Positions 13,562 through 32,807 of a DNA stretch of 35,324 nt are shown here, one piece after another (the first letter of the stretch is position 1; each line of letters starts with the position of its first letter). The notes under the pieces are model-generated. The model saw nothing but the letters and a program-made list of their open reading frames with translations. It had not been told where the DNA came from and ran no database searches. Origin of the DNA: Octopus bimaculoides (Eukaryota); NCBI RefSeq assembly GCF_001194135.2, contig NC_068985.1, positions 49,331,422-49,366,745 on the forward strand. The letters run 5' to 3'. The translations under genes were made by a program, and so were the position numbers.

Positions 13562-14145
13562 CAAGCCTTGGTGCAGTACCAGGCAGTGGCTCTCATGGCT
13601 TCTGGTCTTAACTGATTGGAAGTGTTATCATGTACGTGTTTTGTTTTGGTATAAAAGACGGGCTACATCAAATATTCTGCTCAATACCACAGATTTGCTT
13701 GTCAGTTGCTTGACCATGACCAGTTAAGCATGTCCCTTAGTGGATGATGAAATGTGCATCTCTGATCATGTGCAAAAGTAGTGGGGGAGAAATCATAGCC
13801 ATGTGTTCTGAGGGATTCTTTAGGGTTTGAATAATTAACCCTTAGAAACATAGGTATTTCGTTCATCGTCCTTAAACAAACCTTATTCAGGAACCTTTTG
13901 AGTGAGATAGGCTGCTTGACCTAAAGAAAATTCTAGCTAGGCTCCCACCTGCAAGGTCATGTGCTGTTTATCTTGATATGAGGTTACCATGTTGTGCACA
14001 TATGGTTGTGATGCATGTGCCTAATTTACTCTTATTAGATAGGTAGTCATGACGGTTATATTGGGTTTCATATATTTGTACCCCAGCATCACTTTGATGG
14101 CATGTGCTGCTTTCTCACTCAATAATGATAATAATAATAATAATA
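13562..14145 (+). mobile_element. Unclassified ~580-bp element ending in an (AAT)n tail, probably a LINE 3' region
   Basis: Higher-GC block abruptly replacing the head of a SINE and ending ctctcactcaataatgataataataa. No ORF and no second copy in the window, so the class is inferred. Confidence 0.45.
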
Positions 14146-14360
14146 ATCGTTTCTACTAAAGGCACAAGGCCTGAAATTTGAGGGAGGGGACTAGCCGATT
14201 ACATCGATCCCAGTGTTTCACTGGTACTTAATTCATCAACCCTGAAAGGATGAAAAGCAAAGTCAACCTCAGCAGGATCTGAACTCAGTACGTAAAGATG
14301 GGTGAAATATTGCAAAGCATTTCGTCCAGCATGCTAACGATTCTGCCAGCTCACCGCCTT
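14146..14360 (-). mobile_element. Full-length tRNA-derived SINE family D
   Basis: Minus strand A-box-like TGGCAGAATCG and B-box-like GAGTTCAGATCC, central ctttgcttttcatcctttcagggttgatgaattaagtacca, flanked by (AAT)n. Confidence 0.88.
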
Positions 14361-14527
14361 AATGATAATAATAATAATAATAATATGATTAACAATAATG
14401 ATTTCCTTTCTTTGCCACAGGATGTCCGATGAGGGAAACATTTACAAGGATAGTTTATAATTTGTGTGAAGAAAAGAGAGCATAAAAAGAGAAATGTGTA
14501 CAAAGTATTGGAAAACATGTATGAAGC

Positions 14528-14611
14528 ACATTATTTACATTATTTACATTTGACGGATATTTGTCCACATCTTGACAAATATCCGTCAAATGTAAATAAT
14601 GTAAATAATGT
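14528..14611. repeat. Perfect 38-bp inverted repeat with 8-nt loop
   Basis: acattatttacattatttacatttgacggatatttgtc (14528-14565) is the exact reverse complement of 14574-14611. Confidence 0.97.
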
Positions 14612-14987
14612 ACATAATTCTTCATTTCTTGAGTATAGAAATGTATGATGCAGTCTTCCTGACACAAGAGGTCTCCAACAAAGGCCAATCAAGGACCCCC
14701 ATCCACCATAAACTAAGGATCACCCTGACTAATAAGGGCATAAGCCTTCACCTAAGCTGTTGTTCTCCACATAGTTGTAGTAATTTCTAACATAGGCACA
14801 AAGCAGAAAATTATTTGTTGGGAGGGGAATAATTGATTATATGGATCCCCACTACTTGAACAACAGTAAGAACCACCAAACCAAAGTTCTGCATATTTGC
14901 AAAAGCGTAAAACTGCACCCAGTAGTGCAGTGAAATTACGCAATAGAAATAACATTATTGAAATGATGGTGATGATGATAATGATGG

Positions 14988-15021
<34 letters not shown>

Positions 15022-15946
15022 GGTGGTGGTGGTGGTGGTGATGGTGATGATGATATAAAAATGTTTACTACTACCACTACCACCAATTCTCCTTCAAAAT
15101 GAAGATATCTTGAGANNNNNNNNNNNNNNNNNNNNNNNNNNNNNNNNNNNNNNNNNNNNNNNNNNNNNNNNNNNNNNNNNNNNNNNNNNNNNNNNNNNNN
15201 NNNNNNNNNNNNNNNNNNNNNNNNNNNNNNNNNNNNNNNNNNNNNNNNNNNNNNNNNNNNNNNNNNNNNNNNNNNNNNNNNNNNNNNNNNNNNNNNNNNN
15301 NNNNNNNNNNNNNNNNNNNNNNNNNNNNNNNNNNNNNNNNNNNNNNNNNNNNNNNNNNNNNNNNNNNNNNNNNNNNNNNNNNNNNNNNNNNNNNNNNNNN
15401 NNNNNNNNNNNNNNNNNNNNNNNNNNNNNNNNNNNNNNNNNNNNNNNNNNNNNNNNNNNNNNNNNNNNNNNNNNNNNNNNNNNNNNNNNNNNNNNNNNNN
15501 NNNNNNNNNNNNNNNNNNNNNNNNNNNNNNNNNNNNNNNNNNNNNNNNNNNNNNNNNNNNNNNNNNNNNNNNNNNNNNNNNNNNNNNNNNNNNNNNNNNN
15601 NNNNNNNNNNNNNNNNNNNNNNNNNNNNNNNNNNNNNNNNNNNNNNNNNNNNNNNNNNNNNNNNNNNNNNNNNNNNNNNNNNNNNNNNNNNNNNNNNNNN
15701 NNNNNNNNNNNNNNNNNNNNNNNNNNNNNNNNNNNNNNNNNNNNNNNNNNNNNNNNNNNNNNNNNNNNNNNNNNNNNNNNNNNNNNNNNNNNNNNNNNNN
15801 NNNNNNNNNNNNNNNNNNNNNNNNNNNNNNNNNNNNNNNNNNNNNNNNNNNNNNNNNNNNNNNNNNNNNNNNNNNNNNNNNNNNNNNNNNNNNNNNNNNN
15901 NNNNNNNNNNNNNNNNNNNNNNNNNNNNNNNNNNNNNNNNNNNNNN

Positions 15947-16252
15947 GTGAGTGTTTATTGAGCGAAAACACCTAAAGCTCCACAAGGCTCCGGCAGGGGA
16001 TGGTGGCGAACCCTGCTGTACTCTTCCACCACAACTTTCTCTCACTCTTACTTCCTGTTTCTGTTGTGCCTGTAATTCAAAGGGTCAGCCTTGTCACACT
16101 GTGTCACGCTGAATATCCCCGAGAACTACGTTAAGGGTACACGTGTCTGTGGAGTGCTCAGCCACTTGCACGTTAATTTCACGAGCAGGCTGTTCCGTTG
16201 ATCAGATCAACTGTAACGCTCAACGTCGTAAGCGATGGAGTGCCAACAACAA
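15947..16252 (+). mobile_element. tRNA-derived SINE, core type B with tail Y (5' end in gap), (CAA)n tail
   Basis: Near-identical to 28237-28538, 27052-27341 and the reverse complement of 31429-31816. Confidence 0.9.
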
Positions 16253-16399
16253 TACATGTTGGTGGTGGAAATGTTTAACTCCAGGTCTTGATCTAATAAA
16301 CTTAATAATCAAATGTGTTGTAATTATGACTATCCGATTTTATTTATCTATTTTTTTTTTCAAGTGGTTTATCAAGTGCTACATTACCAAATGTTTCCT

Positions 16400-16690
16400 T
16401 CCACATTTTATTTTTGAGAAGTGTGATTTAGAGGCGATTTAGCTGCTATTTCTAATAATTCTGGCAATAGTAAAGTTGTTTTCTCATTGGGTTGTGAAAA
16501 TATAGTTGTTTTTTTTCTTGTTTAGCCTTGGGTCATCTTTGATCAAGCACATTTATAATTCAAAGCGTTCCATTTATGGCCATCCCATACTTTTAAGAGT
16601 ATCTAAGATTGCATTGCCCAATGTGTTTTTCTTTGTTTAAGACAGTGCTACATTTGACCTGAGACAGATATGACCACTATTTTCTAGTAG
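16400..16690 (+). repeat. Old unclassified dispersed repeat (family E)
   Basis: Motifs gattt(a/g)gctgctatttcta and ctatga.caaag..ttcca.ccatg.ccatcc recur, heavily diverged, at 238-420, 1935-1965, 11640-11700, 20110-20185, 25380-25650 and 34030-34100. Confidence 0.45.
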
Positions 16691-17254
16691 GGAATGAAAA
16701 GGTTCAGAAGGAAAATACACTCAACTAAGATATCAATGAAGAAAGAGAAGCTCACGAATAGAACAACATTGGAGAAAACCTTAGAGTGTGTAGGGTGTAA
16801 CTAAGTGGATCACAATATGTATAACTAACATCATTGTAAAGATACATCACAGTTATAGATAAATAGTCAGGTAGACTTAGTGAACAACAGGGAAGTCATC
16901 TTCAGGTATATTGGTGCTGATTAGTTAGGGTTTCAATCTTGTGTAAGTAACGTATGGTATTAGACAGCTTACAAGACATATGAGCTTATATGATGTATTT
17001 CAATTTTGACAGATCCTTTCCTGAACCACCTCTTGCCAGTAATCCAATTTTTTATCTTGTATTTATAAGACATAGATTGATGTTCTGGAGCATTTGGAGA
17101 TGGGGAGATTGGTGCAAATTGTGGGTTGTATAAGCCATGAAATATGTTAATCATAGAGATATACAATAATTATATAATTTGACGTCCATTTTCCATGCTG
17201 AGAATGTGTTGAAGAATTTGACACCATTCAATAGTCCCAAGAATTATACTAGGC

Positions 17255-17350
17255 TTACTGGTATCTCTGGCATGGTTTCTGTGGTGAGATGCCCTTCATA
17301 ATGCCAAACACTTTACAATATGTACTGGGTGCTCTTTTGTGCCCCCAGTA
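17255..17350 (-). mobile_element. Highly diverged RTE 3' UTR fragment
   Basis: ggtttctgtggtgagatgcccttcataatgccaaacactttac..gggtgctcttttgtgcccc resembles 19250-19330. Confidence 0.55.
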
Positions 17351-17858
17351 CAAGTGAGGTTGCCTTGCATCTTCCAAGACAACAAACCCTGAGAGAGGCA
17401 ACTTTATACTAGGAGTTGAGGGGTTAAAGTTTGAGAGAGGAAACCAGAGCAGAACAGGTTTTATGTGGTAGAGGGGCTTTATGATTACTCTCATTTTAGA
17501 AGAAAGGAGGAATGGGTGATCAGGGTAGAGCAGGGAAGAGATGAAATAGTGGTGCTGAGGTGTCCATGTGAACCCTCAAGGTATGAAGTGAGTAGAAGTG
17601 AAAGGGGGAAGAAGAACTAGGAGTGTGAATGGGTAGTGGTTGAATGGGAGATGAGTGGGTGAGGAGGAAAATATAATGAATGAAGAACAAGTGTGCGTGT
17701 GTGTGTGAAGGGGTGGATGATAAGTGGTAGAAGTTGGTGGCACCTGTAAAATTGGAAAAGGTTGAGGGGTGGATGTAATGAGTAGTGGATAAGAGAGGGT
17801 ATGACCAGTGATGCATAGGGGTGAAGAGTAGTAAGACAGTAATGATAATGATGTAGAT

Positions 17859-18119
17859 CAGTTGTTCTCAACTGGGGTCCATATGGCCCTTAGTGGTTCA
17901 TATAAGATTTTGTTGTTAAAATGTGTACATGCAATAAATAGGTTAGGCTTCTACAATACACAAAATAATTTAACAATTTTTGTTATTCAATTCCTCATAA
18001 TATTGTATTATAAAAATACCATAGGATTTTTCTAAATGTTAAAAGGTTATAAGGGTCCACCTGAGTAAAATAGCAATCAAAGGGGTCCATTGATTTTTTA
18101 AAATGGTTGAGAACCACTG
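17859..18119. mobile_element. hAT (Charlie/MER5-type) MITE, 261 bp
   Basis: TIRs CAGTTGTTCTCAAC and GTTGAGAACCACTG; 8-bp TSD ATGTAGAT (17851-17858) and ATGTAGAC (18120-18127), matching the Charlie nTnTAGAn preference. Confidence 0.9.
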
Positions 18120-18134
18120 ATGTAGACAGAGAAA

Positions 18135-18169
18135 GGAAGAGAGAGGGGGGGAAGAGAGAGAGGGGGAGG

Positions 18170-18215
<46 letters not shown>

Positions 18216-18240
18216 GACAGACAGACAGAGACAGACAGAC

Positions 18241-18297
<57 letters not shown>
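18135..18297. repeat. (GA)n/(GACA)n microsatellite
   Basis: Direct reading. Confidence 0.96.
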
Positions 18298-18299
<2 letters not shown>

Positions 18300-19126
18300 T
18301 AGTAAGTATGAGCCTTATTATTTGAAGGCAAAGTTGACTTTATCAGGATTTGAAATCGGAACAGAGAAATGGAATAAATTACATTAAAGCATTCTGTTTG
18401 ACACTTCGATAATTCTAATGAAGTTAGCTTACTGTTTCTTACATATGTGGTGTTAATAGTAGAGAGGGTAATAATAACAGTACTCTTGAGGGTATGCTGG
18501 CCAACTCAGTTAAATTTTGTTATAAATAGCAGAAATACTGTATTGAATCTGTCTTCAGAAATGAAGTTTATAATAAACTTGGAAAATTAAAAATAATATC
18601 ACAAAAATGGAAATGAATTCTGACAGTTTCTGCCAGCTTTGAATATTGGAATTGCACAAAAAAAGTAAAAACATTTTCTATTTCTGGATCAATATATTCA
18701 GTGTAAATTGTCCTACATAGCTGGAATTCTGAAGAGGAAAAAAACTTGATCTTCTGTCATTGATGAGAATGAAGCTAAATTACTATTCATCAAGAATTTT
18801 AAAAACTTATTTGCATTATTGGATTGATTTGGGGGTTTTACTTTTCTTTCTTTTTTTTTTTTTGGTGAGTTTCCAGATTTTCACATATTTTTAAAAACAA
18901 AAGAAACTATAGAAAGTGTTGAAATCTAAATATTTATATCTAGCTTGCATATATATTTTTTGTATAATAAAGGCTGTACTTAATTACTGGTAACATGTGA
19001 GGAGTTAAGTGATTTCACTTACAACACAAGTGATGAAAATGAATTAAAAAAAACAATTTGGATACTAATATTGTAGACAGATTACTGGTCAAGGTTAATA
19101 TAGCCCTTGAAATATATATATATATA

Positions 19127-19445
19127 TCATCATCATCATCATCATCATCATCGTCGTTTAACGTCCGCTTTCCATGCTAGCATGGGTTGGACGATTAGAC
19201 TGAGGACTGGTGAAACCAGATGGCTACACCAGGTTCCAATCTAATTTGGCAGAGTTTCTACAGCTGGATGGCCTTCCTAACGCCAACCACTCCAAGAGTG
19301 TAGTGGGTGCTTTTATGTGCCACCAGCACGAAGGCCAGTCAGGCGGTACTGGCAGTGGCCACGCTCAAAATGGTGTATTTTACGTGCCACCTGCGCAGGA
19401 GCCAGTCCAGCGGCACTGGCAACGATCTCGCTCGAATGACTTTTC
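19127..19445 (-). mobile_element. Young RTE-LINE 3' UTR/tail copy, continuing into a gap
   Basis: (CAT)n then gtttaacgtccgctttccatgctagcatgggttggacg is the reverse complement of 9100-9140; CpGs retained. Confidence 0.88.
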
Positions 19446-19922
19446 NNNNNNNNNNNNNNNNNNNNNNNNNNNNNNNNNNNNNNNNNNNNNNNNNNNNNNN
19501 NNNNNNNNNNNNNNNNNNNNNNNNNNNNNNNNNNNNNNNNNNNNNNNNNNNNNNNNNNNNNNNNNNNNNNNNNNNNNNNNNNNNNNNNNNNNNNNNNNNN
19601 NNNNNNNNNNNNNNNNNNNNNNNNNNNNNNNNNNNNNNNNNNNNNNNNNNNNNNNNNNNNNNNNNNNNNNNNNNNNNNNNNNNNNNNNNNNNNNNNNNNN
19701 NNNNNNNNNNNNNNNNNNNNNNNNNNNNNNNNNNNNNNNNNNNNNNNNNNNNNNNNNNNNNNNNNNNNNNNNNNNNNNNNNNNNNNNNNNNNNNNNNNNN
19801 NNNNNNNNNNNNNNNNNNNNNNNNNNNNNNNNNNNNNNNNNNNNNNNNNNNNNNNNNNNNNNNNNNNNNNNNNNNNNNNNNNNNNNNNNNNNNNNNNNNN
19901 NNNNNNNNNNNNNNNNNNNNNN

Positions 19923-19956
<34 letters not shown>

Positions 19957-19958
<2 letters not shown>

Positions 19959-20095
19959 CAGGCTTCTTTCACCCACAAGGATTTGGTCTGCCCAGGGCTA
20001 TAGTAAAAGACACTTGCCCAAGGTGCCATGCAGTAGGATTCAATCCAGAACCAAGAGGCTAGGAAGCAGACTTCTTACCCCATAGCCATGCTTGC
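19957..20095 (-). mobile_element. 5' part of SINE family C (internally deleted), adjoining its (TG)n
   Basis: Minus strand gcatggctatggggtaagaagtctgcttcc..ggttctggattgaatcctactgcatggcaccttgggcaagtgtctt. Confidence 0.8.
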
Positions 20096-20294
20096 ATCTC
20101 TATCTAAAAAGATTGGATGGGCATGGCAGGAACACCTTTGTTCATAGGATAACTTGGTTAGGATTGACTTGAGGTTAAACAACAATACTAATATCAACAG
20201 AATAAAGAAGCTAAAATCGCCCTAAATGAGGTCAAGTCTAATTTAGTGGATGAATAGAATGTAAACACAAAATAATCAACATCAATTAGCCTAA

Positions 20295-20320
20295 TCTATA
20301 TATATAAAAATGAGAATGTG

Positions 20321-20371
<51 letters not shown>

Positions 20372-21461
20372 GTGAATCCCTAAAACTCGAGAACTACGCA
20401 ACCAATTTCATTCAAATTTTACAGATGCCTTACTTAGGGTTCCAGTTGTGTTTTAGTCAACTAACTGAAACAATCACATTTCGATACTGTAATGACAGAT
20501 ACTTTCAGAGAAAGAGAGAAAGAGAGAGAAAGAGATGTATATGTACACGTATATGCATAGATATATATATATATAGATATAGATCTATATGCATACATGT
20601 ATATGTATACACATGTGTAGATGTATATATATATAGATGTACNNNNNNNNNNNNNNNNNNNNNNNNNNNNNNNNNNNNNNNNNNNNNNNNNNNNNNNNNN
20701 NNNNNNNNNNNNNNNNNNNNNNNNNNNNNNNNNNNNNNNNNNNNNNNNNNNNNNNNNNNNNNNNNNNNNNNNNNNNNNNNNNNNNNNNNNNNNNNNNNNN
20801 NNNNNNNNNNNNNNNNNNNNNNNNNNNNNNNNNNNNNNNNNNNNNNNNNNNNNNNNNNNNNNNNNNNNNNNNNNNNNNNNNNNNNNNNNNNNNNNNNNNN
20901 NNNNNNNNNNNNNNNNNNNNNNNNNNNNNNNNNNNNNNNNNNNNNNNNNNNNNNNNNNNNNNNNNNNNNNNNNNNNNNNNNNNNNNNNNNNNNNNNNNNN
21001 NNNNNNNNNNNNNNNNNNNNNNNNNNNNNNNNNNNNNNNNNNNNNNNNNNNNNNNNNNNNNNNNNNNNNNNNNNNNNNNNNNNNNNNNNTTCAGATATAC
21101 TTACATTGTGATTTCTGCAATGTGGTGCATAAATTGTCAAGTAAATGAGACGCATCTTTACCTCCACTGATTCACTTGCAAAGTGTTGAGTAAAATTATT
21201 TCGTTGCAGACCTCCTTTGGGTCTTTTTATTATCACTACGACACACATAGTCCCCAGTTGGTAACATTGATTTCAAGGCCCTCCTAGATGAGAGACTGGC
21301 ATTCCACTTAATGTCTATGTTCCATGCTGGCATGGATTGGAGAGTTATTAATGTAGAAATATGGTATCGTAGCTACTAACAGTTGAGGGTTGCATAGTCT
21401 AGACGGCGTTTTTAGATTTCATTATTCTCTTAACCCGGGCAAAGCCGGGTATTTCTGCTAG
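20295..21461 (+). mobile_element. Non-autonomous Helitron
   Basis: 5' A|TCtatatatataaaaatgag followed by (GTCT)n and aaccaatttcattcaaatttt. 3' GC hairpin acccgg-gcaaag-ccgggt (21433-21450) 7 nt upstream of CTAG|T (21458-21462). A|T target, no TSD. About 450 bp of the interior is N. Confidence 0.72.
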
Positions 21462-22112
21462 TTATCTATATTTCCCTCTGCATTTCTTTTTGAACGTTAG
21501 AGTCCCTAATTATTTTCAATTACATTTCTGTAAATAATAACTTCTAATATAGGCACACTACCACAAATTGGGGTGGTGTGGGAGTAGTTAATAGTTAATT
21601 AAACCCCCCCCCCCCCGTTTCCCCCACGTACATATCTAGTATATTTATCAGCCTCTAAAGAATGAAAGGTAAAGCTAATCTTGGTACAGTCTGAACTCAG
21701 AACAAAGAGAGACTTAACAAAATACTACAAGACGTTTTGTCTTGTAGTATTCTGATACTCTCTTAATTCTGCTAATCTACAAATCTTAAATAAATGTGCA
21801 TAATTTTTAGACTAGAACTGAATACATGAATATATATTTGTTTCCACAAGGTTCAACATTTTTATTCACAATAAGAGCACAAACTGGAAGGACAGAATGG
21901 ATTGTAAGATATTTAAATAAAAAATATATATATATGTAACTTAGGACAAGAGACATTAGCCACTCTATTTGACATGGTTGATTGAATTTTCATAAAGTGT
22001 AAGGCATGGTAGGAGAGAGATAAAGATAAATCAAAGATGACTCATATTAATTAGACATTAAAAAGTTCAGTCTCATAGTGGAAATGACACAGGATCAGAG
22101 GACACCATACCA

Positions 22113-22202
22113 TTTCATAAATCATCCGTTTCTTTCTAAATACACACACGTCCGTGTGTGTATGTGTGTGCATTTAGATAGAAAGACGGATGATTTATAA
22201 AA
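22113..22202. repeat. Imperfect fold-back inverted repeat
   Basis: ataaatcatccgt (22117-22129) pairs perfectly with acggatgatttat (22186-22198); ttctttctaaat pairs with atttagatagaa; inner tacacacacg/cgtgtgtgta. Confidence 0.85.
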
Positions 22203-22716
22203 TATGGATTGATGACTAATATATCCACATATTCAAAAACAAACATGATTTTATTTGTGGATATGTGTAAGCACAAGTGGGTACAAAACTTTATAAGTAG
22301 CACCATATATGTATGTATGTATGTATGTGTCAAAACATCTGCATCCGGATCTGCAAATCCTGGACAGGCCTGAATTCCCACAGGAAACATCATGCCAAAT
22401 CATCAGACTTAGAACATTGTGCAGCAGTATCATACCGAACCCTCATTTATCAAAGCAATCAAAGAGTACAATACATATGTTTGTAGTTCTACTTTGCCAA
22501 GGACTTTTCAACCCACAAGTAAATGCATATAGTACACTCTATAAAGTGGTTAGTGAGAAGAAGGACAACCAGTCATAGATGCCAAGACAGAATACTGTGC
22601 ATGAACAATCTGAGAACAAGAGTCCCCAATAAGAAATGAATCAGACTATGACAACCTGTCCAACCCATGGTAAGATGGAATGGCAGACATAAAAGGATGA
22701 TGATGATATGTTGATA

Positions 22717-22894
22717 TAGGCAACGTTGTATAGTTGAGAAATTTGTTTTGCAGCAACATGGTTTGAGGCTTGATTCCATTGTGCAGCACCTTGGATAAGT
22801 GTGTTCTGCTATAAGCCTTGGGCTGACCTGCCTTGTGAATAAAATTTGATTAATGGGAACTGTATGGAAGCCTGTCATGTGTGTGTGTGTGTGT
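22717..22894 (+). mobile_element. 5' part of SINE family C (diverged) ending in (TG)n
   Basis: catggtttgaggcttgattccattgtgcagcaccttggataagtgtgttctgctataagccttgggctgacc aligns with 32840-32930. Confidence 0.78.
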
Positions 22895-22932
22895 GCATAA
22901 ACATGGCTATCACTTACAAGCAAGTATAACTT

Positions 22933-23130
22933 GGTAGTTTGTGTCATGCTCTTGCAAATTGTTGTAGGTGACTTGCAAACAACTCGCACATGCAAGTGCT
23001 ACCAGTCGAGAACTCCGCATACCGGAAGCCAGCAAGTGTATGGGGTAATCGGGAGAGAATGTGTGACATTTCGGGGCCTACCTCTCGACGGCGGTAGTTT
23101 GTGCCATGCTCTTGCAAATTGTTGTAGGTG
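22933..23130. repeat. 38-bp direct repeat x2 (37/38 identical, period 160)
   Basis: ggtagtttgtg(t/c)catgctcttgcaaattgttgtaggtg at 22933-22970 and 23093-23130. Confidence 0.97.
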
Positions 23131-23820
23131 CCAATATATAGAAACCTACAACTGCAAAGCTATATTGCTGTGACCAGACATAAATGCTTTCTCCAGGTCA
23201 GCCTTGACTAAGGCTGTGAAAGCTGGAAGGAGAGAAGACTGCATCAGCAGTCAATTGGTAAGTACTTCAATTAAGTAAACTGGAGCAACATCAAGTGAAG
23301 CGCTTTGCTCATGTACATAACATTCAAGTCCAATAATTGAAATCACATTACAATTGTCAGCCCTAGTCACAAAGCCACATGCACTGTATGTGCTTATGAT
23401 CTGTGCATCATAATCAACACATGCAGCATTAGTTCTACATGCGAGCATGTAGGATGAAAATACCTAGTATGAAAATTGAACAAGGGTTTGTATTAGGAAG
23501 GGCTTGAAAAAGCAATATAGTGAAAATGTCAATTAAACGACATCCTATAATTTAATGAGCATGACAGAAAGAGGGGTCACTATCTTGTACGTAATAACAA
23601 GAAAATAGGAATTCGCAAGACGTCTGTAATAAGTCATAACATATTTATTACTGGAGGTAACGTGTTAACATATAAGGTTAATTGAAGGAAAGGCTTGTAA
23701 CATTACATGAACATATTCCTTTTTGCAATCACGTCTCCAAGTAAGTGAGGTGAATGTACGCGTGAGCGGGCATGTATGTGGTGGCCTGACTCAATGCCGG
23801 TCTAAGACTGGACAGACAAT
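22933..23820 (-). ncRNA. Putative heat-shock-inducible structured non-coding transcript (3' extent unknown)
   Basis: Lies directly downstream of the HSE/TATA/Inr promoter. First AUG gives only a 14-codon ORF (MPAHAYIHLTYLET*); no recognisable long ORF; many hairpins. Transcription is inferred, not shown. Confidence 0.35.
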
Positions 23821-23822
23821 GA
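23817..23822 (-). promoter_or_regulatory. Initiator-like element, predicted TSS at 23820
   Basis: Minus strand TCATTG with the A exactly 30 nt downstream of the first T of the TATA box. Confidence 0.6.
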
Positions 23823-23842
23823 GCGTATTTAGAATGCTTCGC

Positions 23843-23850
23843 TTTATATA
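23843..23850 (-). promoter_or_regulatory. TATA box (TATATAAA)
   Basis: Plus strand tttatata equals minus TATATAAA(G); 38 bp from the HSE, at -30 relative to the Inr. Confidence 0.8.
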
Positions 23851-23887
23851 AGGGATGAACCAGAAGTCCCTGACTTCCATGTCAACC

Positions 23888-23922
23888 GGAAGCTTCTAGA
23901 ATGTTCGAGAACTTTCTAGAAG
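23888..23922. promoter_or_regulatory. Heat-shock element: 7 contiguous perfect alternating nGAAn units
   Basis: gGAAgcTTCtaGAAtgTTCgaGAActTTCtaGAAg; GAA at 23889, 23899, 23909, 23919 and TTC at 23894, 23904, 23914. This is the canonical HSF-binding arrangement. Confidence 0.95.
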
Positions 23923-24273
23923 GTTGAGGGAGATTACTCTCATTAAATCCCTTTTCCGTTTTGCTTTCCTGCTTGACCACCAGGGTTCACAATAGCAAGC
24001 TTAAAAACGATAATGATATAGCTTACAAAAGTTTATAGTTTCTTGAAGAATGTGAATGTGTGGGTGTGTGTGTATGATGAAAACGGTGAGTCTAGTGAAA
24101 GTATTATTTCATTTGAGAACACATTAGTAGCCTTAACATGTTTCCCTGAACAAGTAACCCCAGGTGGGTATATTATTACTTAAAATTATTATCAGTTAAG
24201 CTATGATATGTAATCTTTGCAGATTTCACTCTGCTTGAAAAGTAGTAAACACACACCCACACACACGCATGCA

Positions 24274-24316
<43 letters not shown>

Positions 24317-24440
24317 CTGGTATTTAATCATTGATAGATCTATTCCAGTCTCTGTTTCCTCTGTGCTGCTAGTGTAATGGTGTTTGTTCTTCAGATCAAG
24401 TTAGTCTTCTACAACTCAGACTCAAGCGCTCTTAACTCAC

Positions 24441-24563
24441 TTGCCTTGTTATCTCTCATTACCCATGTTGTGTCCAATTCCACCAGATTCCACACTAACA
24501 ATGCTAATCTTTCCTCCCCATAATAATAAACTCTCTGGAACTCATTCCTTGTCCATGTCTTTT
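24441..24563 (-). CDS. Weak candidate internal exon (phase 1-1, 123 nt), product unknown
   Basis: Acceptor cctacag| and strong donor CAA|GTGAGT; open frame EKTWTRNEFQRVYYYGEERLALLVWNLVELDTTWVMRDNKA. No homology recognised. Confidence 0.18.
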
Positions 24564-25315
24564 CTGTAGGTTTCAGCTTACAGTAATTTAAGCAGAACAT
24601 TAAGGACATAGATCTCACTGGCCTTGGAAGGCCTGTGAAGACCTAGCAATTAAGACACACACACACACACAAGCATGCGTGCGCACACAGACATGCACAC
24701 ATGCACACATGCATGCACACATGCATGCACACACATGCATGTACGTGCACACACATGCACACACACACTCTCTCTCTCACACACACACCCACACGCACTC
24801 ACACACACATACTCATATCATTCGTTCATTGCTTTTGCAGTGTTTTTTCCATACTAGCTAGCATGGGTTAGATGAATATATATATATATATATCAGTGAA
24901 GTATTGTTTAACAGCTGGATGGTCTTCCTGCCATTAACTCTTACTTGTTATTCAAGTAAAGGAGTTTTCATTCTACAGGTGCCCGGAAATGTCATCATAT
25001 AACAATGTCTGTAGTGCAGCACAGAATGTAAATATCCCCCCACACACACACACACACAAAATACATGCACTTACAAATTTAAATTAGTAAGTATATGTTG
25101 CAAATTAATACTAATGCATCCAAAGCCAGGAATGCTGCTGCTGCTAATGATGATGGTGATGATGATGTTTTAATATTGAGCATGTAAGGAGTGGTTTACA
25201 ACTGATAAAGCCGCAATCAACACTATAAAAGAGTGACATGGAGTGGGGGAGTAAAAGATGAGTGTTAATTCTACAATGGTGTACTTTACATAACATAAAA
25301 CACACCACCACCACC

Positions 25316-25354
<39 letters not shown>

Positions 25355-26084
25355 GCTATTATTTCTCATACACACACACATACACACACCCCAACAAGTT
25401 GATGAGAGCCTCTATGTGGACAATCAAACTTCTAGAAAGAGCAGCTAATTCTCCCTTAAATCACATAGCTCAGTCTTCTCATATGAAGGACACACGCATT
25501 TGAAAAAAAATACGGGCTGATCACAATCAAAACAGGTCTAATTGGATCAAGACTTACCTAGGGCTAAACAATAACAGCATATATAAAATTTTAAAAATTA
25601 GGCACTTCTGTGTGGTCACTCATACTGCTAGAAATATCAACCAAATCTTTAAGTCACACTTTAATATGACATGCTCATTCCATCCTTTTCTGAAAAATGA
25701 AAAAGCCTCTAAAATGGAAGCCACGTCTCCTAGAAATTTCATTGTAATGTAGAGAAAGGATACCATGTAGCTGATGATAAAGATAGATATGATGGTCATG
25801 GCTGGAACGATTTTGATGACAGATTTGCTTGGTTAGAACTGACTTGGTCTAAACAACAAGTTACATACATAAATGCCTTCTCTTCTCCCTTCTGTTGTCT
25901 GTCTCTCAATATATAGTTAGCTATGTGTACATGTGTAGAGAGAGAGAGAGACAGACATACAGACAGACAGACGGGAAGAGAGAGACAGACATACATTCAT
26001 AGATACATATTACATGCATACATGACACATATACATAGCACAAATTTAACCAGCACATACCTGCATATTAGGACACATACATTT

Positions 26085-26156
<72 letters not shown>

Positions 26157-26519
26157 AAAACTACAATAACAGCAACAATAACAATCTGAGCCATCGTTAC
26201 ATGTGGTGCCTCAATCAATTAAACAACCTTCGTTGCTGCTCTACCCTCAGCATCCCCACCATTACGCCATCCAAATATTCAAATTAGATGCCTCTAGAAC
26301 ATCTGATACCCATATTGATGAAGTGACAGAAGATCACTGGGGATTAATCACATCATGCCCCACTCCCTCCTCATTGCCACACCCTTCCCTCCATCCAACT
26401 CCCACAATCTTTAGCACACCCTCCACCACTTCATTTTCCTCCACCTCCTCCATCTTCAGACCTGTCACTGAGCAACAGCAATAAATTCTAGAGATCGAAA
26501 TCGATTCCTGATTTGTGGC

Positions 26520-28236
26520 ATAGCATGACATGGTATGTAAGGGGCGTTTGCTGAGATTATATATGAGGTGGTGTATGGTGTATATTTTGGGGTATGCTTG
26601 GTAAGTACTGTGAGATATGTATGGCATTTATCTGGGTATATCTAGGTATGCATGGTATGTTATCTGAGGTATGCATAATATGTTATCTGTAGCATGATAG
26701 TATNNNNNNNNNNNNNNNNNNNNNNNNNNNNNNNNNNNNNNNNNNNNNNNNNNNNNNNNNNNNNNNNNNNNNNNNNNNNNNNNNNNNNNNNNNNNNNNNN
26801 NNNNNNNNNNNNNNNNNNNNNNNNNNNNNNNNNNNNNNNNNNNNNNNNNNNNNNNNNNNNNNNNNNNNNNNNNNNNNNNNNNNNNNNNNNNNNNNNNNNN
26901 NNNNNNNNNNNNNNNNNNNNNNNNNNNNNNNNNNNNNNNNNNNNNNNNNNNNNNNNNNNNNNNNNNNNNNNNNNNNNNNNNNNNNNNNNNNNNNNNNNNN
27001 NNNNNNNNNNNNNNNNNNNNNNNNNNNNNNNNNNNNNNNNNNNNNNNNNNNAGCAAAAACACCTAAAGCTCCACGAGGCTCCGGCAGGGGATGGTGGTGA
27101 ACCCTGCTGTACATTTCACCACAACTTTCTCTCTCACTCTTACTTCCTGTTTCTGTTGTGCCTATAATTCAAAGGGTCAGCCTTGTCACACTGTGTCACG
27201 CTGAATATCCCTGAGAACTACGTTACGGGTACACATGTCTGTGGAGTGCTCAGCCACTTGCATGTTAATTTCACGAGCAGGCTGTTCCGTTGATCGGATC
27301 AACTGGAACCCTCGACGTCGTAAGCGATGGAGTGCCAACACATGTATGGGACGTTACCTGGAGTATGATGATATGTTAGCTGGAGTATGATTGCATGTTA
27401 TCCTGGGGTGTGTATGGAATGTTTTCCATCAAGGACTGGATGGTTTACAACAGCATGACCCCGTGACCCTGCTATGCATGACAGAGAACAGAGATAGCTT
27501 GACTGCAAAATCATCTAGAGTGGCACCCCCCCCCCCCNNNNNNNNNNNNNNNNNCTCGAATGACTGGCTGCACCAGTGAAGAGTACTTGATGATGATGAT
27601 GATGAGGATGATGATGATGACAGGGGTGCTGGTATGTTATTCTGGATATTTATGGAATGTATAACACCTAGGTTGTGTATGGTGTGTTATCTGGGGTATA
27701 TAATAATCCAAGCCAGATAGAAGCAACATGATGTGATACAGTTCACTTAGAGATAACAAAGACTTAGAGGTGAAGCAAGTGACAAAAGATGTTTTGTTAA
27801 CTATTGTTGCTGTTGTTGTTGCAGTGGTGGTGGTGGTGGTAATGGTATGGTGGTGGTGATGGTAATGGTGGTGNNNNNNNNNNTATGAGGTGGTGTATGG
27901 TGTATATTTTGGGGTATGCTTGGTAAGTACTGTGAGATATGTATGGCATTTATCTGGGTATATCTAGGTATGCATGGTATGTTATCTGAGGTATGCATAA
28001 TATGTTATCTGTAGCATGATAGTATGTTATTTGGGGTGTGATGGTATGTCATCCGAAGTCATCATCATCAGCATCAGCATCATTTAACATCCGTTGTCCA
28101 TACTGGTACGGTGTATGGTATATTATCTGGGATAAGTATGGTATATTTAGAGTATGTATGACATATTACCTGGGAGTATGTAGGGCTTGTTATTTTGGAT
28201 ATGCATTGTATGTTACCTGGGGTATGTATGGGACGT
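26520..28236. repeat. Degenerate ~21-22-bp minisatellite (consensus approx. ggtatgttatctggggtatgtat), interrupted by SINEs, gaps and GGT tracts
   Basis: Variants recur throughout 26520-26703, 27342-27430, 27630-27700 and 27884-28236. Confidence 0.75.
27052..27341 (+). mobile_element. SINE core B/tail Y (5' end in gap)
   Basis: Identical to 28332-28538 over the overlap; followed by ATGTATGGGACGTT (27342-27355). Confidence 0.92.
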
Positions 28237-28538
28237 TGTGGAGGCACAATGGCCCAGTGGTTAGGGCAGCGTACTCACGGTCATAGGATCGCAGTTTTGA
28301 TTCCCAGACCGGGCGTTGTGAGTGTTTATTGAGCAAAAACACCTAAAGCTCCACGAGGCTCCGGCAGGGGATGGTGGTGAACCCTGCTGTACATTTCACC
28401 ACAACTTTCTCTCTCACTCTTACTTCCTGTTTCTGTTGTGCCTATAATTCAAAGGGTCAGCCTTGTCACACTGTGTCACGCTGAATATCCCTGAGAACTA
28501 CGTTACGGGTACACATGTCTGTGGAGTGCTCAGCCACT
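28237..28538 (+). mobile_element. SINE head/core B/tail Y (3' end in gap)
   Basis: A box TGGCCCAGTGG, B-box-like GTTTTGATTCC; preceded by ATGTATGGGACGTT (28224-28237). Confidence 0.92.
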
Positions 28539-29341
28539 NNNNNNNNNNNNNNNNNNNNNNNNNNNNNNNNNNNNNNNNNNNNNNNNNNNNNNNNNNNNNN
28601 NNNNNNNNNNNNNNNNNNNNNNNNNNNNNNNNNNNNNNNNNNNNNNNNNNNNNNNNNNNNNNNNNNNNNNNNNNNNNNNNNNNNNNNNNNNNNNNNNNNN
28701 NNNNNNNNNNNNNNNNNNNNNNNNNNNNNNNNNNNNNNNNNNNNNNNNNNNNNNNNNNNNNNNNNNNNNNNNNNNNNNNNNNNNNNNNNNNNNNNNNNNN
28801 NNNNNNNNNNNNNNNNNNNNNNNNNNNNNNNNNNNNNNNNNNNNNNNNNNNNNNNNNNNNNNNNNNNNNNNNNNNNNNNNNNNNNNNNNNNNNNNNNNNN
28901 NNNNNNNNNNNNNNNNNNNNNNNNNNNNNNNNNNNNNNNNNNNNNNNNNNNNNNNNNNNNNNNNNNNNNNNNNNNNNNNNNNNNNNNNNNNNNNNNNNNN
29001 NNNNNNNNNNNNNNNNNNNNNNNNNNNNNNNNNNNNNNNNNNNNNNNNNNNNNNNNNNNNNNNNNNNNNNNNNNNNNNNNNNNNNNNNNNNNNNNNNNNN
29101 NNNNNNNNNNNNNNNNNNNNNNNNNNNNNNNNNNNNNNNNNNNNNNNNNNNNNNNNNNNNNNNNNNNNNNNNNNNNNNNNNNNNNNNNNNNNNNNNNNNN
29201 NNNNNNNNNNNNNNNNNNNNNNNNNNNNNNNNNNNNNNNNNNNNNNNNNNNNNNNNNNNNNNNNNNNNNNNNNNNNNNNNNNNNNNNNNNNNNNNNNNNN
29301 NNNNNNNNNNNNNNNNNNNNNNNNNNNNNNNNNNNNNNNNN

Positions 29342-29822
29342 TGGTGGTGGTGGTGGTGGTGGTGGTGATGGTAATGGTGGTGGTGGTGGTGGTAGTGGTG
29401 GTGGTAATGGTATGGTGGTGGTGGTGGTGGTGGTAATGGTATGGTGGTGGTGATGGTAATGGTGGTGGTGGTGGTCTATGCTTCAAGGATTGTGGAGGTG
29501 ATAACAGTAACATGGTAATAGTGGTGGTGTTGGTTGTGGTGATAGTGGTTTATGGCGCATGGTCCTGGTGTTGTTATGTCAGTGGTACGTGTATGAAAGA
29601 ATTTGATTTAGTTTTCTTCTGCAATGATCATCATAGTGGCATAGTGGTTGTTGTAGTAGGAGTAGTGGTAGTGGTGGTGATAGTAGTGATTCATACTTCC
29701 TTGGTGGATGGTAGTGCAGGTAGTGGTATTGGTGTTGCTGTTGTTCATACATCGGATGATGGCTATTTATGCTAGCTGTAGTAGTACTAAAGGTGATGAT
29801 GGTAGTTGTGGAGGTGTTGTTG

Positions 29823-29854
<32 letters not shown>

Positions 29855-30426
29855 GGTGGTGGTGGTGGTGTGATTCATACTCTTATGATAGTGCTTGTGA
29901 TTCACACTCCTTGTGGTACTTATTTATGATACGTACAACAGTAATGGTGATGGTGGGAGCAGTGGTAATGGCAAAGGAAATATTAATTAAGATGCTGGAG
30001 AGAAGTACAGAATATGTAGTGATTTTGATAATGGTACTGGCGGTAGTGGTNNNNNNNNNNNNNNNNNNNNNNNNNNNNNNNNNNNNNNNNNNNNNNNNNN
30101 NNNNNNNNNNNNNNNNNNNNNNNNNNNNNNNNNNNNNNNNNNNNNNNNNNNNNNNNNNNNNNNNNNNNNNNNNNNNNNNNNNNNNNNNNNNNNNNNNNNN
30201 NNNNNNNNNNNNNNNNNNNNNNNNNNNNNNNNNNNNNNNNNNNNNNNNNNNNNNNNNNNNNNNNNNNNNNNNNNNNNNNNNNNNNNNNNNNNNNNNNNNN
30301 NNNNNNNNNNNNNNNNNNNNNNNNNNNNNNNNNNNNNNNNNNNNNNNNNNNNNNNNNNNNNNNNNNNNNNNNNNNNNNNNNNNNNNNNNACTAAAGGTGA
30401 TGATGGTAGTTGTGGAGGTGTTGTTG

Positions 30427-30458
<32 letters not shown>

Positions 30459-30500
30459 GGTGGTGGTGGTGGTGGTGATAATGGTGGTGGGTGACAATAG
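29342..30500. repeat. (GGT)n/(GTT)n low-complexity region with an ~85-bp block repeated at 29787 and 30391
   Basis: Direct reading. Confidence 0.9.
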
Positions 30501-31240
30501 TAGTGAAGGAGAGTGTAGCAATGGCAATAATAGTTTATAGTCCTAGTTTTGTGTAGAACTCCTGTAGTCTTGGAGACACACAGCAGTGTTGCATAGAAAA
30601 AGGGTGTGGTAATATTGTGGTTTGTGAAGTAAAATTGACTGGGGGTAGGGTGTAGTTAATAATGAAAATTTGTGGTGGCATTCAAGAAATGGCAACAGGG
30701 GTATTGGTGTAGGGGTCAGTTGTAGTGGTAATAATGATCCTTAAGGTTCCCTTTATTTCTGCCATTATAATAAACTGTTTAAAAGACGAGAGAGACAGGG
30801 AAAATTCTTAAATACCATGGCACCAGCACAGAGTTGTGTGAGGTCAGAGTGAGGAATGGAATGTGTGATGTTGTCCCATGTGTGCCAGAACAAAAGAAGC
30901 GGAACTATTTAGAAATTCTAGCCTCCATTTGATGCACCAGACATGTATTGGAGAGGAATATAGGAAGCCTTAAAGAATGCGCTGAAATGCCTGCTGTTTA
31001 TAAAACAACACAGGATAACGGGGGCCAAAGGTCAGATGTTTAATTGACACTGTTAGAGCAGAAGGAACTGTTCCTGGCTTATTCCCAGTTTTGATAGGCT
31101 TATGATGTTGTTTGGGACCAGAGGAAATTCCAATATTTTTATGCAAGGGATTGGCAGGAACAAAGAAGCAAGCATGCATGCACGCATACTTTAGTGACAC
31201 ATTCATCCTTACTCATATTGTTATGAGTGAGTGAATATGT

Positions 31241-31271
<31 letters not shown>

Positions 31272-31428
31272 AGAGTGTGTGTGTATACATACAGAGAAAG
31301 ATAGAGAGAGAGAAACACAGACAGACAGACAAAAAGGGGTGTGTGTATCAATGCCTTCTTTTTTGTGTCCAAGCACACACACATATATGTTCATATGCAC
31401 AAATGTACATACACACACGCACACACAA

Positions 31429-31816
31429 TGTTGGCACTCCGTCGGTTACAACGACGAGGGTTTCAGTTGATCCGATCAACGGAACAGCTTGCTTGTGAAA
31501 TTATCGTGCAAGTGGCTGAGCACTCCACAGACACGTGTACCTTTAACATAATTCTCGGGGGAGATGCAGTGTGACACAGAGTGTGACAAGGCTGGCCCTT
31601 TGAAATACAGATACAACAGAAACAGGAAGATAGAGAGAGAGAGAAAGTTGTGGTGAAAGAGTACAGCAGGGTTCGCCACCACCTGCTGCCGGAGACTCAT
31701 GGAGCATTAGGAGTTTTCGCTCAATAAACACTCACAACGCCCGGTCTGGGAATCGAAACCGCGATCTTACAACCACGAGTCTGCTGCCCTAACCACTAGG
31801 CCATTGCACCTCCACA
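31429..31816 (-). mobile_element. Full-length SINE head/core B/tail Y
   Basis: Minus A box TGGCCTAGTGG and B box GGTTTCGATTCC; candidate TSD GCACACACAA at 31419-31428 and 31818-31827 (low complexity). Confidence 0.92.
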
Positions 31817-31925
31817 TGCACACACAAACACATGGAAGGTGTGTCCATATATTTCAAGACCCTATTGATTAGTATGGAAAGGTTTTCTTCAAGGGAGACC
31901 ATGGTAGGGCTATTTTTTTCTTTAC

Positions 31926-32036
31926 CTTTTCTAAGAAAGCCCAGCAGTTTCCCATGCATGCAAGTTTCCCTCTCCATGTCACTTATGTTGTCCAAGGAAA
32001 CAGCAAGGGCCAGTACAAGTGTTCTTGTAGCCATTG
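31926..32036 (-). CDS. Candidate coding exon (111 nt), product unknown
   Basis: Acceptor ctctttgcattttgacag| and donor AAG|GTAAAG; GC-richer than the flanks. Frame reads MATRTLVLALAVSLDNISDMERETCMHGKLLGFLRK with ATG in GCAATGG context. No homology recognised. Confidence 0.33.
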
Positions 32037-32306
32037 CTGTCAAAATGCAAAGAGCTGAAACAGTGACCACAAGTATTTCCTCTCATACTTTAACAGTGCT
32101 ACCATTCTTCAACCCAAGACTGGTATTTTATTCATTAATCTTGAAAGAAAGAAAAACAGAGTTAATCTCAGAAGGATTTGAACTCAGGAACCCAAAATAA
32201 ATGCCACATGTTACTCTATCCAATACTCTAACAATTTTACCAATTTACAATCATGATTTATGTATACATGCACACACACACTCACACACACATACACACA
32301 TATACC

Positions 32307-32807
32307 CAACAAGCCAAGTGAGATCCTAGCTGTGGCCTGTACCAGTGTCGCATAACTGGCCCATTTAAGAGTACCCTTCAATCGTTGGGTAATATATTGT
32401 GCTTGAGAAGACCTGTTGAGTCAAGTGAAATTGTTGTTGTTGCCAATGTCAGTAGTGCCTGACTGGTACCCATGCCAGTGGCACATAAACATCACCATCT
32501 GTGTGTGATTGATGCCAGTGCTGCCAGACTGGCTCCCATATCAGTGGCACATAAAAAGCACCATACAAGAGTAGTCAATGCCAATGCCACCTGACTGGCC
32601 CCCATGTTGGTGGCACATAAAAAGCACCCACCACACTCTTGGAGTGGTTGGTGTTAGGAAGGGCATCCAGCTGTAGAAACCTTGCCAGACTAGATTGGAG
32701 CCTGGTGCAGCCTCCTGGTTTGCCAGTCCTCAGTCAAACCATCCAGCCCATACCAGCATAGAAAGCGAATGTTAAACAATGATGATGACGATGATGATGA
32801 TGATGAT
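32307..32807 (+). mobile_element. RTE-LINE 3' UTR copy with three tandem units and (GAT)n tail
   Basis: Colinear with 8685-9150 (aagtgagatc, gaagacctgttgagtcaagt, gagtggttggtgttaggaagggcatccagctgtagaaac). Confidence 0.88.

What the first reader, a model, noticed from the sequence alone, without database searches (positions are those of the whole stretch)
22900..23820. What the heat-shock promoter drives: an ORF-less unique region, candidate stress-induced lncRNA
Seen: from the predicted TSS the minus strand gives only a 14-codon uORF. There is an AATAAA at +172 (23644-23649) and an ATTAAA at 23551-23556, then ~500 nt of hairpin-dense sequence. Possible donors include AG|GTATTT (~23463), AG|GTAGGC (~23080), CG|GTATGC (~23022) and TT|GTAAGT (~22917). 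Three readings compete: (a) a heat-induced non-coding RNA functionally analogous to Drosophila hsr-omega; (b) a non-coding first exon spliced to a distant chaperone or other gene, as in hsp90/hsc70 genes, with coding exons in gaps or beyond the window; (c) a solo LTR (U3 with HSE, TATA, R with AATAAA), analogous to the heat-activated plant retrotransposon ONSEN. I looked for TG..CA ends with a matching TSD (e.g. 23625 and 24027) and found none, which weakens (c).
Basis: partly seen in the sequence, partly recalled or inferred. Interest (0 to 1): 0.75.

Follow-up and report, generated by a model that had tools for sequence, protein, structure and literature searches.

The report
Orphan heat-shock promoter in an octopus genome
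A textbook heat-shock promoter sits in a repeat-rich stretch of octopus DNA with no protein-coding gene detectable for 24 kb downstream, so it probably makes a short non-coding RNA or arrived as a mobile or duplicated promoter module, but only expression and copy-number data can decide.

Summary
On the minus strand there are seven contiguous perfect HSF-binding units (23888-23922), TATATAAA at -30 and an initiator with A at 23820. They are followed by a 14-codon uORF, AATAAA at +172 and ATTAAA at +265, and no ORF longer than 65 codons in 921 nt.

Only the HSE array exceeds chance (about 1e-8 expected per window). The poly(A) hexamers, splice-donor look-alikes and hairpins all occur at background rates in controls.

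The window is octopod DNA, not arthropod: its interspersed repeats match exonised copies in Octopus bimaculoides proteins.

Pfam scans found no coding exon on the minus strand across the window or on the plus strand from 19923 onward. A homology search of non-repeat minus-strand fragments at 1-22900 also found none.

New here: the promoter lies in a 420-bp islet that keeps its CpGs (observed/expected 0.8-1.0, from -137 to +283). The window overall is CpG-depleted (0.28). The islet is therefore either a long-protected promoter or a young insertion.

LTR-style ends with target duplications exist but are chance-level, so the solo-LTR reading is neither supported nor refuted.

I favour a short unspliced polyadenylated heat-inducible non-coding transcript (0.35). 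The rivals are a TE-borne or duplicated promoter module (0.30) and a leader exon of a distant gene (0.25). The locus does not have hsr-omega architecture.

The parts
23888..23927 (-). Heat-shock element array: 7 contiguous perfect nGAAn/nTTCn units (23888-23922) plus an imperfect eighth unit (23923-27). It spans -68 to -108 relative to the predicted TSS.
   Evidence: It is the only perfect array in the window; about 1e-8 are expected by chance.
23843..23850 (-). TATA box, TATATAAA, at -30 to -23.
   Evidence: read directly from the sequence.
23815..23822 (-). Initiator-like TCATTG. The predicted TSS is the A at 23820.
   Evidence: The position is inferred from the TATA spacing and the Inr consensus, not measured.
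23729..23773 (-). 14-codon upstream ORF (MPAHAYIHLTYLET, then stop), starting at the first ATG at +48.
23644..23649 (-). AATAAA at +172, followed by a CA about 20 nt downstream and a U-rich tract. Candidate poly(A) site 1.
   Evidence: The hexamer frequency is at background level.
23551..23556 (-). ATTAAA at +265. Candidate poly(A) site 2. It lies 13 nt upstream of the last CpG of the islet (23538, +283).
23538..23957 (.). CpG-retaining islet: 15 CpG in 420 bp. In 300-bp windows the observed/expected ratio is 0.89-0.98. It covers the HSE, TATA, TSS and the first ~283 nt of the putative transcript.
   Evidence: The whole window has o/e 0.28 (median 0.23). The 23501-23800 window ranks second of 297.
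22900..23537 (-). It is ORF-poor and CpG-depleted apart from the insert below, and has no other copy in the window.
22933..23130 (.). Two 38-nt direct repeats (22933-22970 and 23093-23130, 37/38 identical) bracket a 122-nt CpG-rich segment (22971-23092, 9 CpG). That segment holds the two best donor-like sites.
   Evidence: Its nature is unexplained.
22521..22899 (+). Copy of an interspersed repeat family ending in (GT)n.
   Evidence: 64% identity to 32620-32987. Relatives lie at 9082-9154 and 19135-19192.

Best explanation
A genuine HSF-dependent core promoter in an octopod genome drives a short, unspliced, polyadenylated non-coding transcript. The promoter consists of a 7-unit HSE at -68 to -102, a TATA box at -30 and an initiator. 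I expect a transcript of roughly 0.2-0.3 kb ending after AATAAA (+172) or ATTAAA (+265), with possible read-through to about 0.9 kb. This would be a stand-alone heat-inducible transcription unit, not a chaperone gene.

Proposed mechanism: on proteotoxic stress, HSF trimers bind the contiguous inverted nGAAn units cooperatively and recruit or release Pol II at the TATA/Inr promoter. The RNA has 29 ATGs that all open short ORFs, so it would act as RNA, if it acts at all, or be a by-product.

Shown: the promoter sequence, the absence of coding capacity and the local CpG retention. Inferred: the TSS, the termination sites, heat inducibility and any function.
For: - The HSE array is perfect and cannot be chance. 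TATA-to-Inr spacing is canonical.
- No ORF exceeds 65 codons in 921 nt.
- No Pfam domain was found in minus-strand fragments across the window (1-24000, 24000-25900 and 25900-35324) or in plus-strand fragments of 19923-35324.
- No homologue turned up for fragments of 22900-24000 on either strand, or for 81 non-repeat minus-strand fragments from 1-22900.
- No strong donor lies in the first 400 nt.
- Two poly(A) hexamers with U-rich downstream tracts sit at +172 and +265. The CpG-retaining islet ends at +283, close to the second one.
- An undecayed 21-base HSE core and CpG o/e of 0.9-1.0, in a window at 0.28 whose repeat copies are 64-88% identical, argue that the module is either maintained or young, not a decayed relic.
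Against: - There are no expression data of any kind.
- The poly(A) hexamers are at background frequency.
- There are no comparative data, so conservation is untested.
- Strong multi-unit HSE/TATA promoters are classically attached to chaperone genes. Octopus introns are long (own knowledge), and 5.4 kb of the window is N.
- The negative homology searches used chimeric queries, and the database evidently holds few octopus ORFs. The only named matches were two UniRef O. bimaculoides entries.
Confidence: 0.35

Rival explanations
1. A young TE-borne or duplicated promoter module. About 450-500 bp (roughly 23490-23990), carrying HSEs, TATA, a short R-like region with AATAAA and a U5-like tail, arrived recently. 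It could be a solo LTR (ONSEN- or copia-like heat-responsive U3) or a promoter-plus-leader fragment copied from a heat-shock gene. Any RNA it makes would be a by-product.
For: - The U3-R-U5-like order, with TATA and AATAAA 200 nt apart.
- CpG retention is confined to 23538-23957 in a CpG-poor background. The only other comparably CpG-rich windows include copies of an interspersed repeat family, e.g. 16101-16400.
- One TG..CA candidate, 23982-23489 with the 5-bp TSD AACCC, encloses the whole islet.
- The HSE is undecayed. The surroundings are dense with transposable elements and simple repeats.
Against: - TG..CA plus TSD pairs are at chance level: 77% of random anchors have one.
- There are no terminal inverted repeats beyond TG/CA.
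- No second copy exists in the roughly 30 kb of sequenced window.
- No gag, RT or integrase domain lies on the minus strand on either side, so only a solo copy is possible.
- No paralogous ORF turned up in the protein database (a weak test).
Confidence: 0.3
2. A non-coding first exon of a heat-inducible protein-coding gene. The coding exons would lie beyond the window's left end (more than 23.8 kb away) or inside assembly gaps. This is the arrangement of leader-intron genes such as Drosophila hsp83, hsc70 and hsp90.
For: - Promoter strength and layout are those of classical chaperone genes.
- Oyster cytoplasmic HSP70 is reported to have one intron (PMC11268181).
- The octopus genome is large with long introns (own knowledge).
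- Five gaps (2.7 kb of N) lie between the TSS and position 10861, and ten (4.3 kb) between the TSS and the left end of the window.
- The low CpG o/e of the whole window would fit a methylated gene body.
Against: - No chaperone or other Pfam domain and no protein homologue was found anywhere downstream in the window.
- The best donors in the first 400 nt are only at the 87th-90th percentile; the good ones are at +740 to +904.
- The leader is 29% A and has a uAUG at +48 with A at -3. Heat-shock leaders are A-rich and free of uAUGs (own knowledge).
- Rapidly induced heat-shock genes are typically intron-poor, because splicing is impaired by heat (own knowledge).
- The gaps are flanked by simple repeats, so they more likely hide repeats than exons.
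Confidence: 0.25
3. An HSF-binding enhancer or silent relic: the HSE array acts at a distance on another gene, or is not used at all, and the TATA/Inr match is incidental.
For: In Drosophila most active HSF sites are associated with non-heat-shock genes (title of PMC3021535, listed; the paper was not read here).
Against: - TATA at exactly -30 from an Inr-like TCATTG, 40 nt below the array, is the canonical promoter geometry.
- A relic should have decayed like its surroundings, but the HSE is perfect and the CpGs are retained.
Confidence: 0.1

Closest known systems
Drosophila hsr-omega (93D) heat-inducible lncRNA
   Same: An HSE-driven Pol II promoter, no long ORF, only a very short translatable ORF near the 5' end, and a polyadenylated product expected.
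   Different: hsr-omega has a 10-20 kb nuclear transcript with a long 3' block of ~280-bp tandem repeats and a conserved intron (own knowledge). Here TRF reports no tandem array between 20642 and 24249, no convincing intron signals were found, and the predicted unit is about 0.2-0.9 kb. There is no sequence relationship, and Rfam gave nothing.
HSF1-activated non-coding transcription in mammals (satellite III and others; review PMC9032817, seen, abstract only)
   Same: HSF binding to non-genic DNA drives non-coding RNA on stress.
   Different: SatIII arises from megabase pericentromeric satellite arrays without a classical TATA/Inr promoter (own knowledge). This is a single compact TATA/Inr unit in interspersed-repeat DNA.
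Heat-responsive LTR retrotransposons (plant ONSEN/ATCOPIA78; Drosophila copia) and HSE-carrying Helitrons of C. elegans
   Same: HSEs in a U3-like position upstream of TATA, with a poly(A) signal about 170 nt after the TSS. It sits in a TE-rich context and shows signs of youth (retained CpGs).
   Different: No demonstrable termini or TSD, no other copy in the window, and no internal retroelement domains nearby. No such element is known to me in cephalopods.
Leader-exon heat-shock genes (Drosophila hsp83, vertebrate and invertebrate hsc70 and hsp90)
   Same: HSE/TATA promoter followed by a non-coding first exon.
   Different: No donor of good quality lies near the TSS, and no coding exon was found within 23.8 kb.

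Membership tests
Canonical HSF-dependent (heat-shock) Pol II promoter | At least 3 contiguous inverted nGAAn units. | tested here: met
   7 perfect units at 23888-23922. About 1e-8 expected by chance.
Canonical HSF-dependent (heat-shock) Pol II promoter | HSE within about 40-150 bp upstream of a TATA box, and TATA about 25-31 bp upstream of an initiator. | tested here: met
   The HSE ends at -68, TATATAAA lies at -30 to -23, and TCATTG places A at 23820.
Canonical HSF-dependent (heat-shock) Pol II promoter | Heat-induced, HSF-dependent initiation. | not testable with these tools
   No RNA or ChIP data are accessible.
hsr-omega-type stress lncRNA gene | Long 3' block of tandem repeats within a transcript longer than 10 kb. 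| tested here: not met
   TRF reports no array between 20642 and 24249. Within 22900-24248 the only notable non-SSR direct repeat is one 38-nt pair.
hsr-omega-type stress lncRNA gene | Absence of a long ORF, with a small 5' ORF. | tested here: met
   A 14-codon first ORF; the longest ORF is 65 codons. This is also what random non-coding DNA gives.
hsr-omega-type stress lncRNA gene | Single intron with conserved junctions; nuclear speckle (omega speckle) function. | not testable with these tools
   Donor-like sites are at background density. No transcript data are available.
Solo LTR of an LTR retrotransposon | TG...CA termini flanked by a 4-6 bp target-site duplication. | tested here: inconclusive
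   Six candidates were found, the best being 23982-23489 with TSD AACCC. The same test succeeds at 77% of random anchors.
Solo LTR of an LTR retrotransposon | U3-R-U5 order: enhancer/TATA, then TSS, then poly(A) signal within a few hundred bp. | tested here: met
   HSE, TATA, TSS at 23820 and AATAAA at +172. The hexamer itself is at background frequency.
Solo LTR of an LTR retrotransposon | Multiple dispersed copies in the genome. | not testable with these tools
   No octopus genome is searchable here. No second copy exists in the window, and the protein database gave no paralogous ORF (weak).
Solo LTR of an LTR retrotransposon | Adjacent internal region (PBS, gag-pol, PPT) if not solo. | tested here: not met
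   No retroelement Pfam domain on the minus strand on either side. If it is an LTR, it is solo.
Chaperone gene with non-coding leader exon | Downstream same-strand exons encoding a chaperone domain (HSP70, HSP90, HSP20, DnaJ and so on). | tested here: not met
   No Pfam hit in minus-strand fragments of 1-24000 and no protein homologue. Exons in gaps or beyond the window are not excluded.
Chaperone gene with non-coding leader exon | Good 5' splice site closing a short leader exon. | tested here: inconclusive
   The best sites in +1 to +400 are at the 87th-90th percentile of all GT sites. Better ones lie at +740, +799 and +904 (approximate PWM).

The most novel reading that the evidence does not exclude
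This is a host-maintained, stand-alone HSF-driven non-coding RNA gene of cephalopods. Its promoter would have been kept unmethylated and intact by selection inside an otherwise methylated, decaying region. That would make it a lophotrochozoan counterpart, in function only, of hsr-omega and SatIII stress RNAs.
Probability: 0.15. Interest if true: 0.65.

Novelty: new member of a known kind. Interest (0 to 1): 0.4.

Why it matters
HSF-driven non-coding transcription is known from flies and mammals. To my knowledge it has not been described in molluscs or other lophotrochozoans. A verified stand-alone unit in an octopus would extend it to a third major animal branch.

If the module instead proves to be TE-borne, it would be an animal example of heat-responsive promoters being spread by mobile DNA, as in ONSEN and the C. 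elegans Helitrons.

There is also a practical use. The roughly 150-bp module of HSE, TATA and Inr is a compact candidate for a heat-inducible promoter in cephalopod transgenesis, whatever it drives in nature.

Tried and rejected
- I first took the window for a penaeid shrimp scaffold because it is rich in simple repeats and gaps. I rejected this when the window's repeats matched Octopus bimaculoides UniRef proteins at 75-91% amino-acid identity.
- Exact-sequence look-ups of 11 ORF variants from 22573-24183 found none in the collection, so no other contigs could be fetched.
- One metagenome DNA scan with an HSE...TATA pattern gave a single hit, L001 (JGI24699J35502). It shares only the generic HSE and TATA words and is not homologous.
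- Rfam gave nothing over the whole window at gathering threshold, and nothing real over 22000-24600 at E<=5. The sub-threshold miRNA-like hits belong to the 22112-22203 foldback. No tRNAs were found.
- A pri-miRNA reading of the hairpins at 23121-23152 and around 22960 was dropped. The stems are about 16 bp and the fold z-scores are ordinary.
- A second, proximal HSE (GGAAG...CTTC at 23877-23863) was rejected. The GAA and TTC cores are 12 nt apart, out of phase with the array and with each other.
- Literature searches for octopus or cephalopod heat-shock promoters and lncRNAs found nothing specific.
- I did not scan genome contigs or viral contigs. They hold prokaryotic and viral DNA, and a negative would say nothing.

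Full report
**What the window is.** The 35,324-base window has 15 runs of N totalling 5,434 bases. It carries dozens of microsatellites and several interspersed repeat families. I first assumed a decapod crustacean. That was wrong. A protein search with repeat-derived fragments returned two UniRef Octopus bimaculoides entries and two unnamed metaclust entries. These contain exonised copies of two of the window's repeat families at 75-91% amino-acid identity. A LINE reverse-transcriptase tail at 8279-8668 also matched. The window is therefore a draft scaffold of an octopod; O. bimaculoides is the only named match.

**The observation.** On the minus strand the features run as follows.
- Seven contiguous perfect nGAAn/nTTCn units occupy 23888-23922, with an imperfect eighth at 23923-27.
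- TATATAAA is at 23850-23843.
- TCATTG places a likely +1 A at 23820, so TATA sits at -30.
- The first ATG (23773, +48) opens a 14-codon ORF.
- AATAAA is at +172 and ATTAAA at +265.
- All 29 ATGs in 921 nt open short ORFs; the longest is 65 codons.

**What is beyond chance and what is not.** The HSE array is decisive. About 1e-8 arrays of this kind are expected per window, and 300 first-order Markov simulations never exceeded four units. It is the only perfect array in the window.
- The two poly(A) hexamers together occur about once per kb on this strand.
- Three donor-like sites reach the 95th percentile in 921 nt, against 3.3 per kb expected. None lies in the first 400 nt, where the best are at the 87th-90th percentile. 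The good ones are at +740, +799 and +904 (the PWM was written from memory and is approximate).
- The three 300-nt fold z-scores are -1.06, -2.06 and -1.79. A quarter of 28 control segments from the same window match or beat them.

**Is there a gene downstream?** I translated all stop-free fragments and scanned them against Pfam.
- The scans covered the minus strand at 15947-24000, then at 1-15116 and 24000-25900, then at 25900-35324, and the plus strand at 19923-35324. Plus-strand 1-19400 was not scanned.
- No real domain appeared. There was no chaperone domain and no retroelement domain; the only hits were low-complexity matches below threshold.
- A homology search with every fragment from 22900-24000 on both strands found nothing.
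- A homology search with 81 non-repeat minus-strand fragments from 1-22900 also found nothing.
- Rfam and tRNA scans were empty.

Caveats: the queries were chimeric, exons shorter than about 28-38 residues are missed, and the database holds few octopus proteins. In addition, ten gaps (4.3 kb of N) lie downstream of the TSS within the window.

**A new observation: CpG.**
- The window is strongly CpG-depleted, with observed/expected 0.28 overall and a median of 0.23 in 300-bp windows.
- Against this background, 15 CpGs cluster in 23538-23957. In 300-bp windows the ratio there is 0.89-0.98, ranking second and fifth of 297.
- The islet therefore runs from -137 to +283, ending 13 nt past ATTAAA.
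- The next 445 nt downstream hold only two CpGs.
- In O. bimaculoides, methylation is mosaic and concentrated in gene bodies, while intergenic CpGs are comparatively unmethylated (PMC9476566).
- My inference is that the window as a whole has a history of germline methylation, perhaps as the body of a large gene.
- The promoter module then has either been protected from methylation, as active promoters are, or is too young to have decayed. Both readings agree with the undecayed 21-base HSE core in a neighbourhood whose repeat copies are 64-88% identical.

**The LTR question.**
- Six TG...CA pairs with 4-5 bp flanking duplications bracket the promoter. The best is 23982-23489 with TSD AACCC, and it encloses the CpG islet.
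- The same search succeeds at 77% of 928 random anchors in this repeat-rich window.
- The termini therefore carry no information either way.
- No retroelement domains flank the module, so only a solo copy is possible.
- There is no second copy in the window.
- Genome-wide copy number is the decisive datum and could not be obtained.
Exact-protein look-ups for local ORFs found nothing.

**Interpretation.** The promoter itself is as good as sequence evidence can make it. What it drives is unresolved.
- **Short non-coding transcript, about 0.35.** I rank first a short unspliced polyadenylated non-coding transcript of about 0.2-0.3 kb. There is no usable donor near the TSS. The leader is not A-rich and has a uAUG. 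Two poly(A) sites with U-rich downstream tracts follow at +172 and +265. The protected islet ends at the second of these.
- **Young TE-borne or duplicated module, about 0.30.** This explains the same features and the sharp CpG boundaries. It is not exclusive of heat-induced RNA being made.
- **Leader exon of a distant gene, about 0.25.** This is weakened inside the window but cannot be excluded in a genome with long introns.
- **Enhancer or silent relic, about 0.10.** The exact TATA/Inr geometry and the lack of decay argue against it.

**Comparison with known systems.** Functionally the nearest are HSF-driven non-coding RNAs, namely Drosophila hsr-omega and mammalian SatIII (review PMC9032817, abstract seen), and heat-responsive TE promoters such as ONSEN, copia and the C. 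elegans Helitrons. Membership in the hsr-omega type fails on its defining tandem-repeat body. Membership in the LTR class is untestable here on copy number and inconclusive on termini. Membership in the class 'canonical heat-shock promoter' is met on every sequence criterion.

**One unexplained detail.** A 122-nt CpG-rich segment (22971-23092, 9 CpGs) lies exactly between two 38-nt direct repeats that are 37/38 identical. It contains the two best donor-like sites. I could not classify it.

**Verdict.** This is a real and unusually clean heat-shock promoter with no detectable gene, in an octopus genome. The 'lncRNA' label is plausible but unproven, and the hsr-omega analogy is only functional. 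Interest is moderate. A single BLAST against a chromosome-level octopus assembly, plus inspection of existing RNA-seq, would settle it.

Noticed in passing
window 26562-27258 and 27884-28538: 26562-26703 is 100% identical to 27884-28025, and 27052-27258 is 100% identical to 28332-28538. Both pairs abut N gaps. The 655-bp block 27884-28538 looks like the sequence that belongs in gap 26704-27051. This would be an assembly redundancy, not a biological duplication.
   Followed up: partly
window 22933-23130: Two 38-nt direct repeats (37/38 identical) bracket a 122-nt segment with 9 CpGs in an otherwise CpG-poor stretch. There is no tail, no Rfam or tRNA hit, and no other copy in the window. It may be a young insertion with an unusually long duplication, or a local assembly or haplotype artefact.
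   Followed up: partly
whole window: CpG observed/expected is 0.28 overall, while GpC is 0.91. Given mosaic gene-body methylation in O. bimaculoides (PMC9476566), this suggests the 35 kb may lie inside a historically methylated gene body, such as a long intron.
   Followed up: partly
window 8279-8668 (+): C-terminal remnant of a LINE reverse transcriptase, 42-50% identical to RT proteins carrying Pfam RVT_1. A 59-residue piece is 75% identical to part of an O. bimaculoides 'helicase' gene model, that is, an exonised TE.
   Followed up: yes
window 7816-8003, 15947-16253, 27052-27351, 28237-28538, 31409-31735: A SINE-like family of about 300 bp, present in five copies at 83-95% identity. Translated pieces occur in several O. 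bimaculoides gene models.
   Followed up: partly
window 5347-5582, 8717-9153, 17166-17354, 19113-19438, 22521-22899, 32359-32987: A second interspersed family whose copies often end in a microsatellite.
   Followed up: partly
window 22112-22203: A 92-bp foldback with 38-nt arms, 74% complementary. Rfam gives only sub-threshold miRNA-like matches (best 38 bits against a gathering score of 81). It is probably a small inverted-repeat element.
   Followed up: partly
L001 (JGI24699J35502_11056040) 207-273: An unrelated eukaryotic HSE-TATA promoter on a 1.7-kb metagenome contig, picked up by the generic pattern. It is not homologous to the window outside the pattern words.
   Followed up: yes
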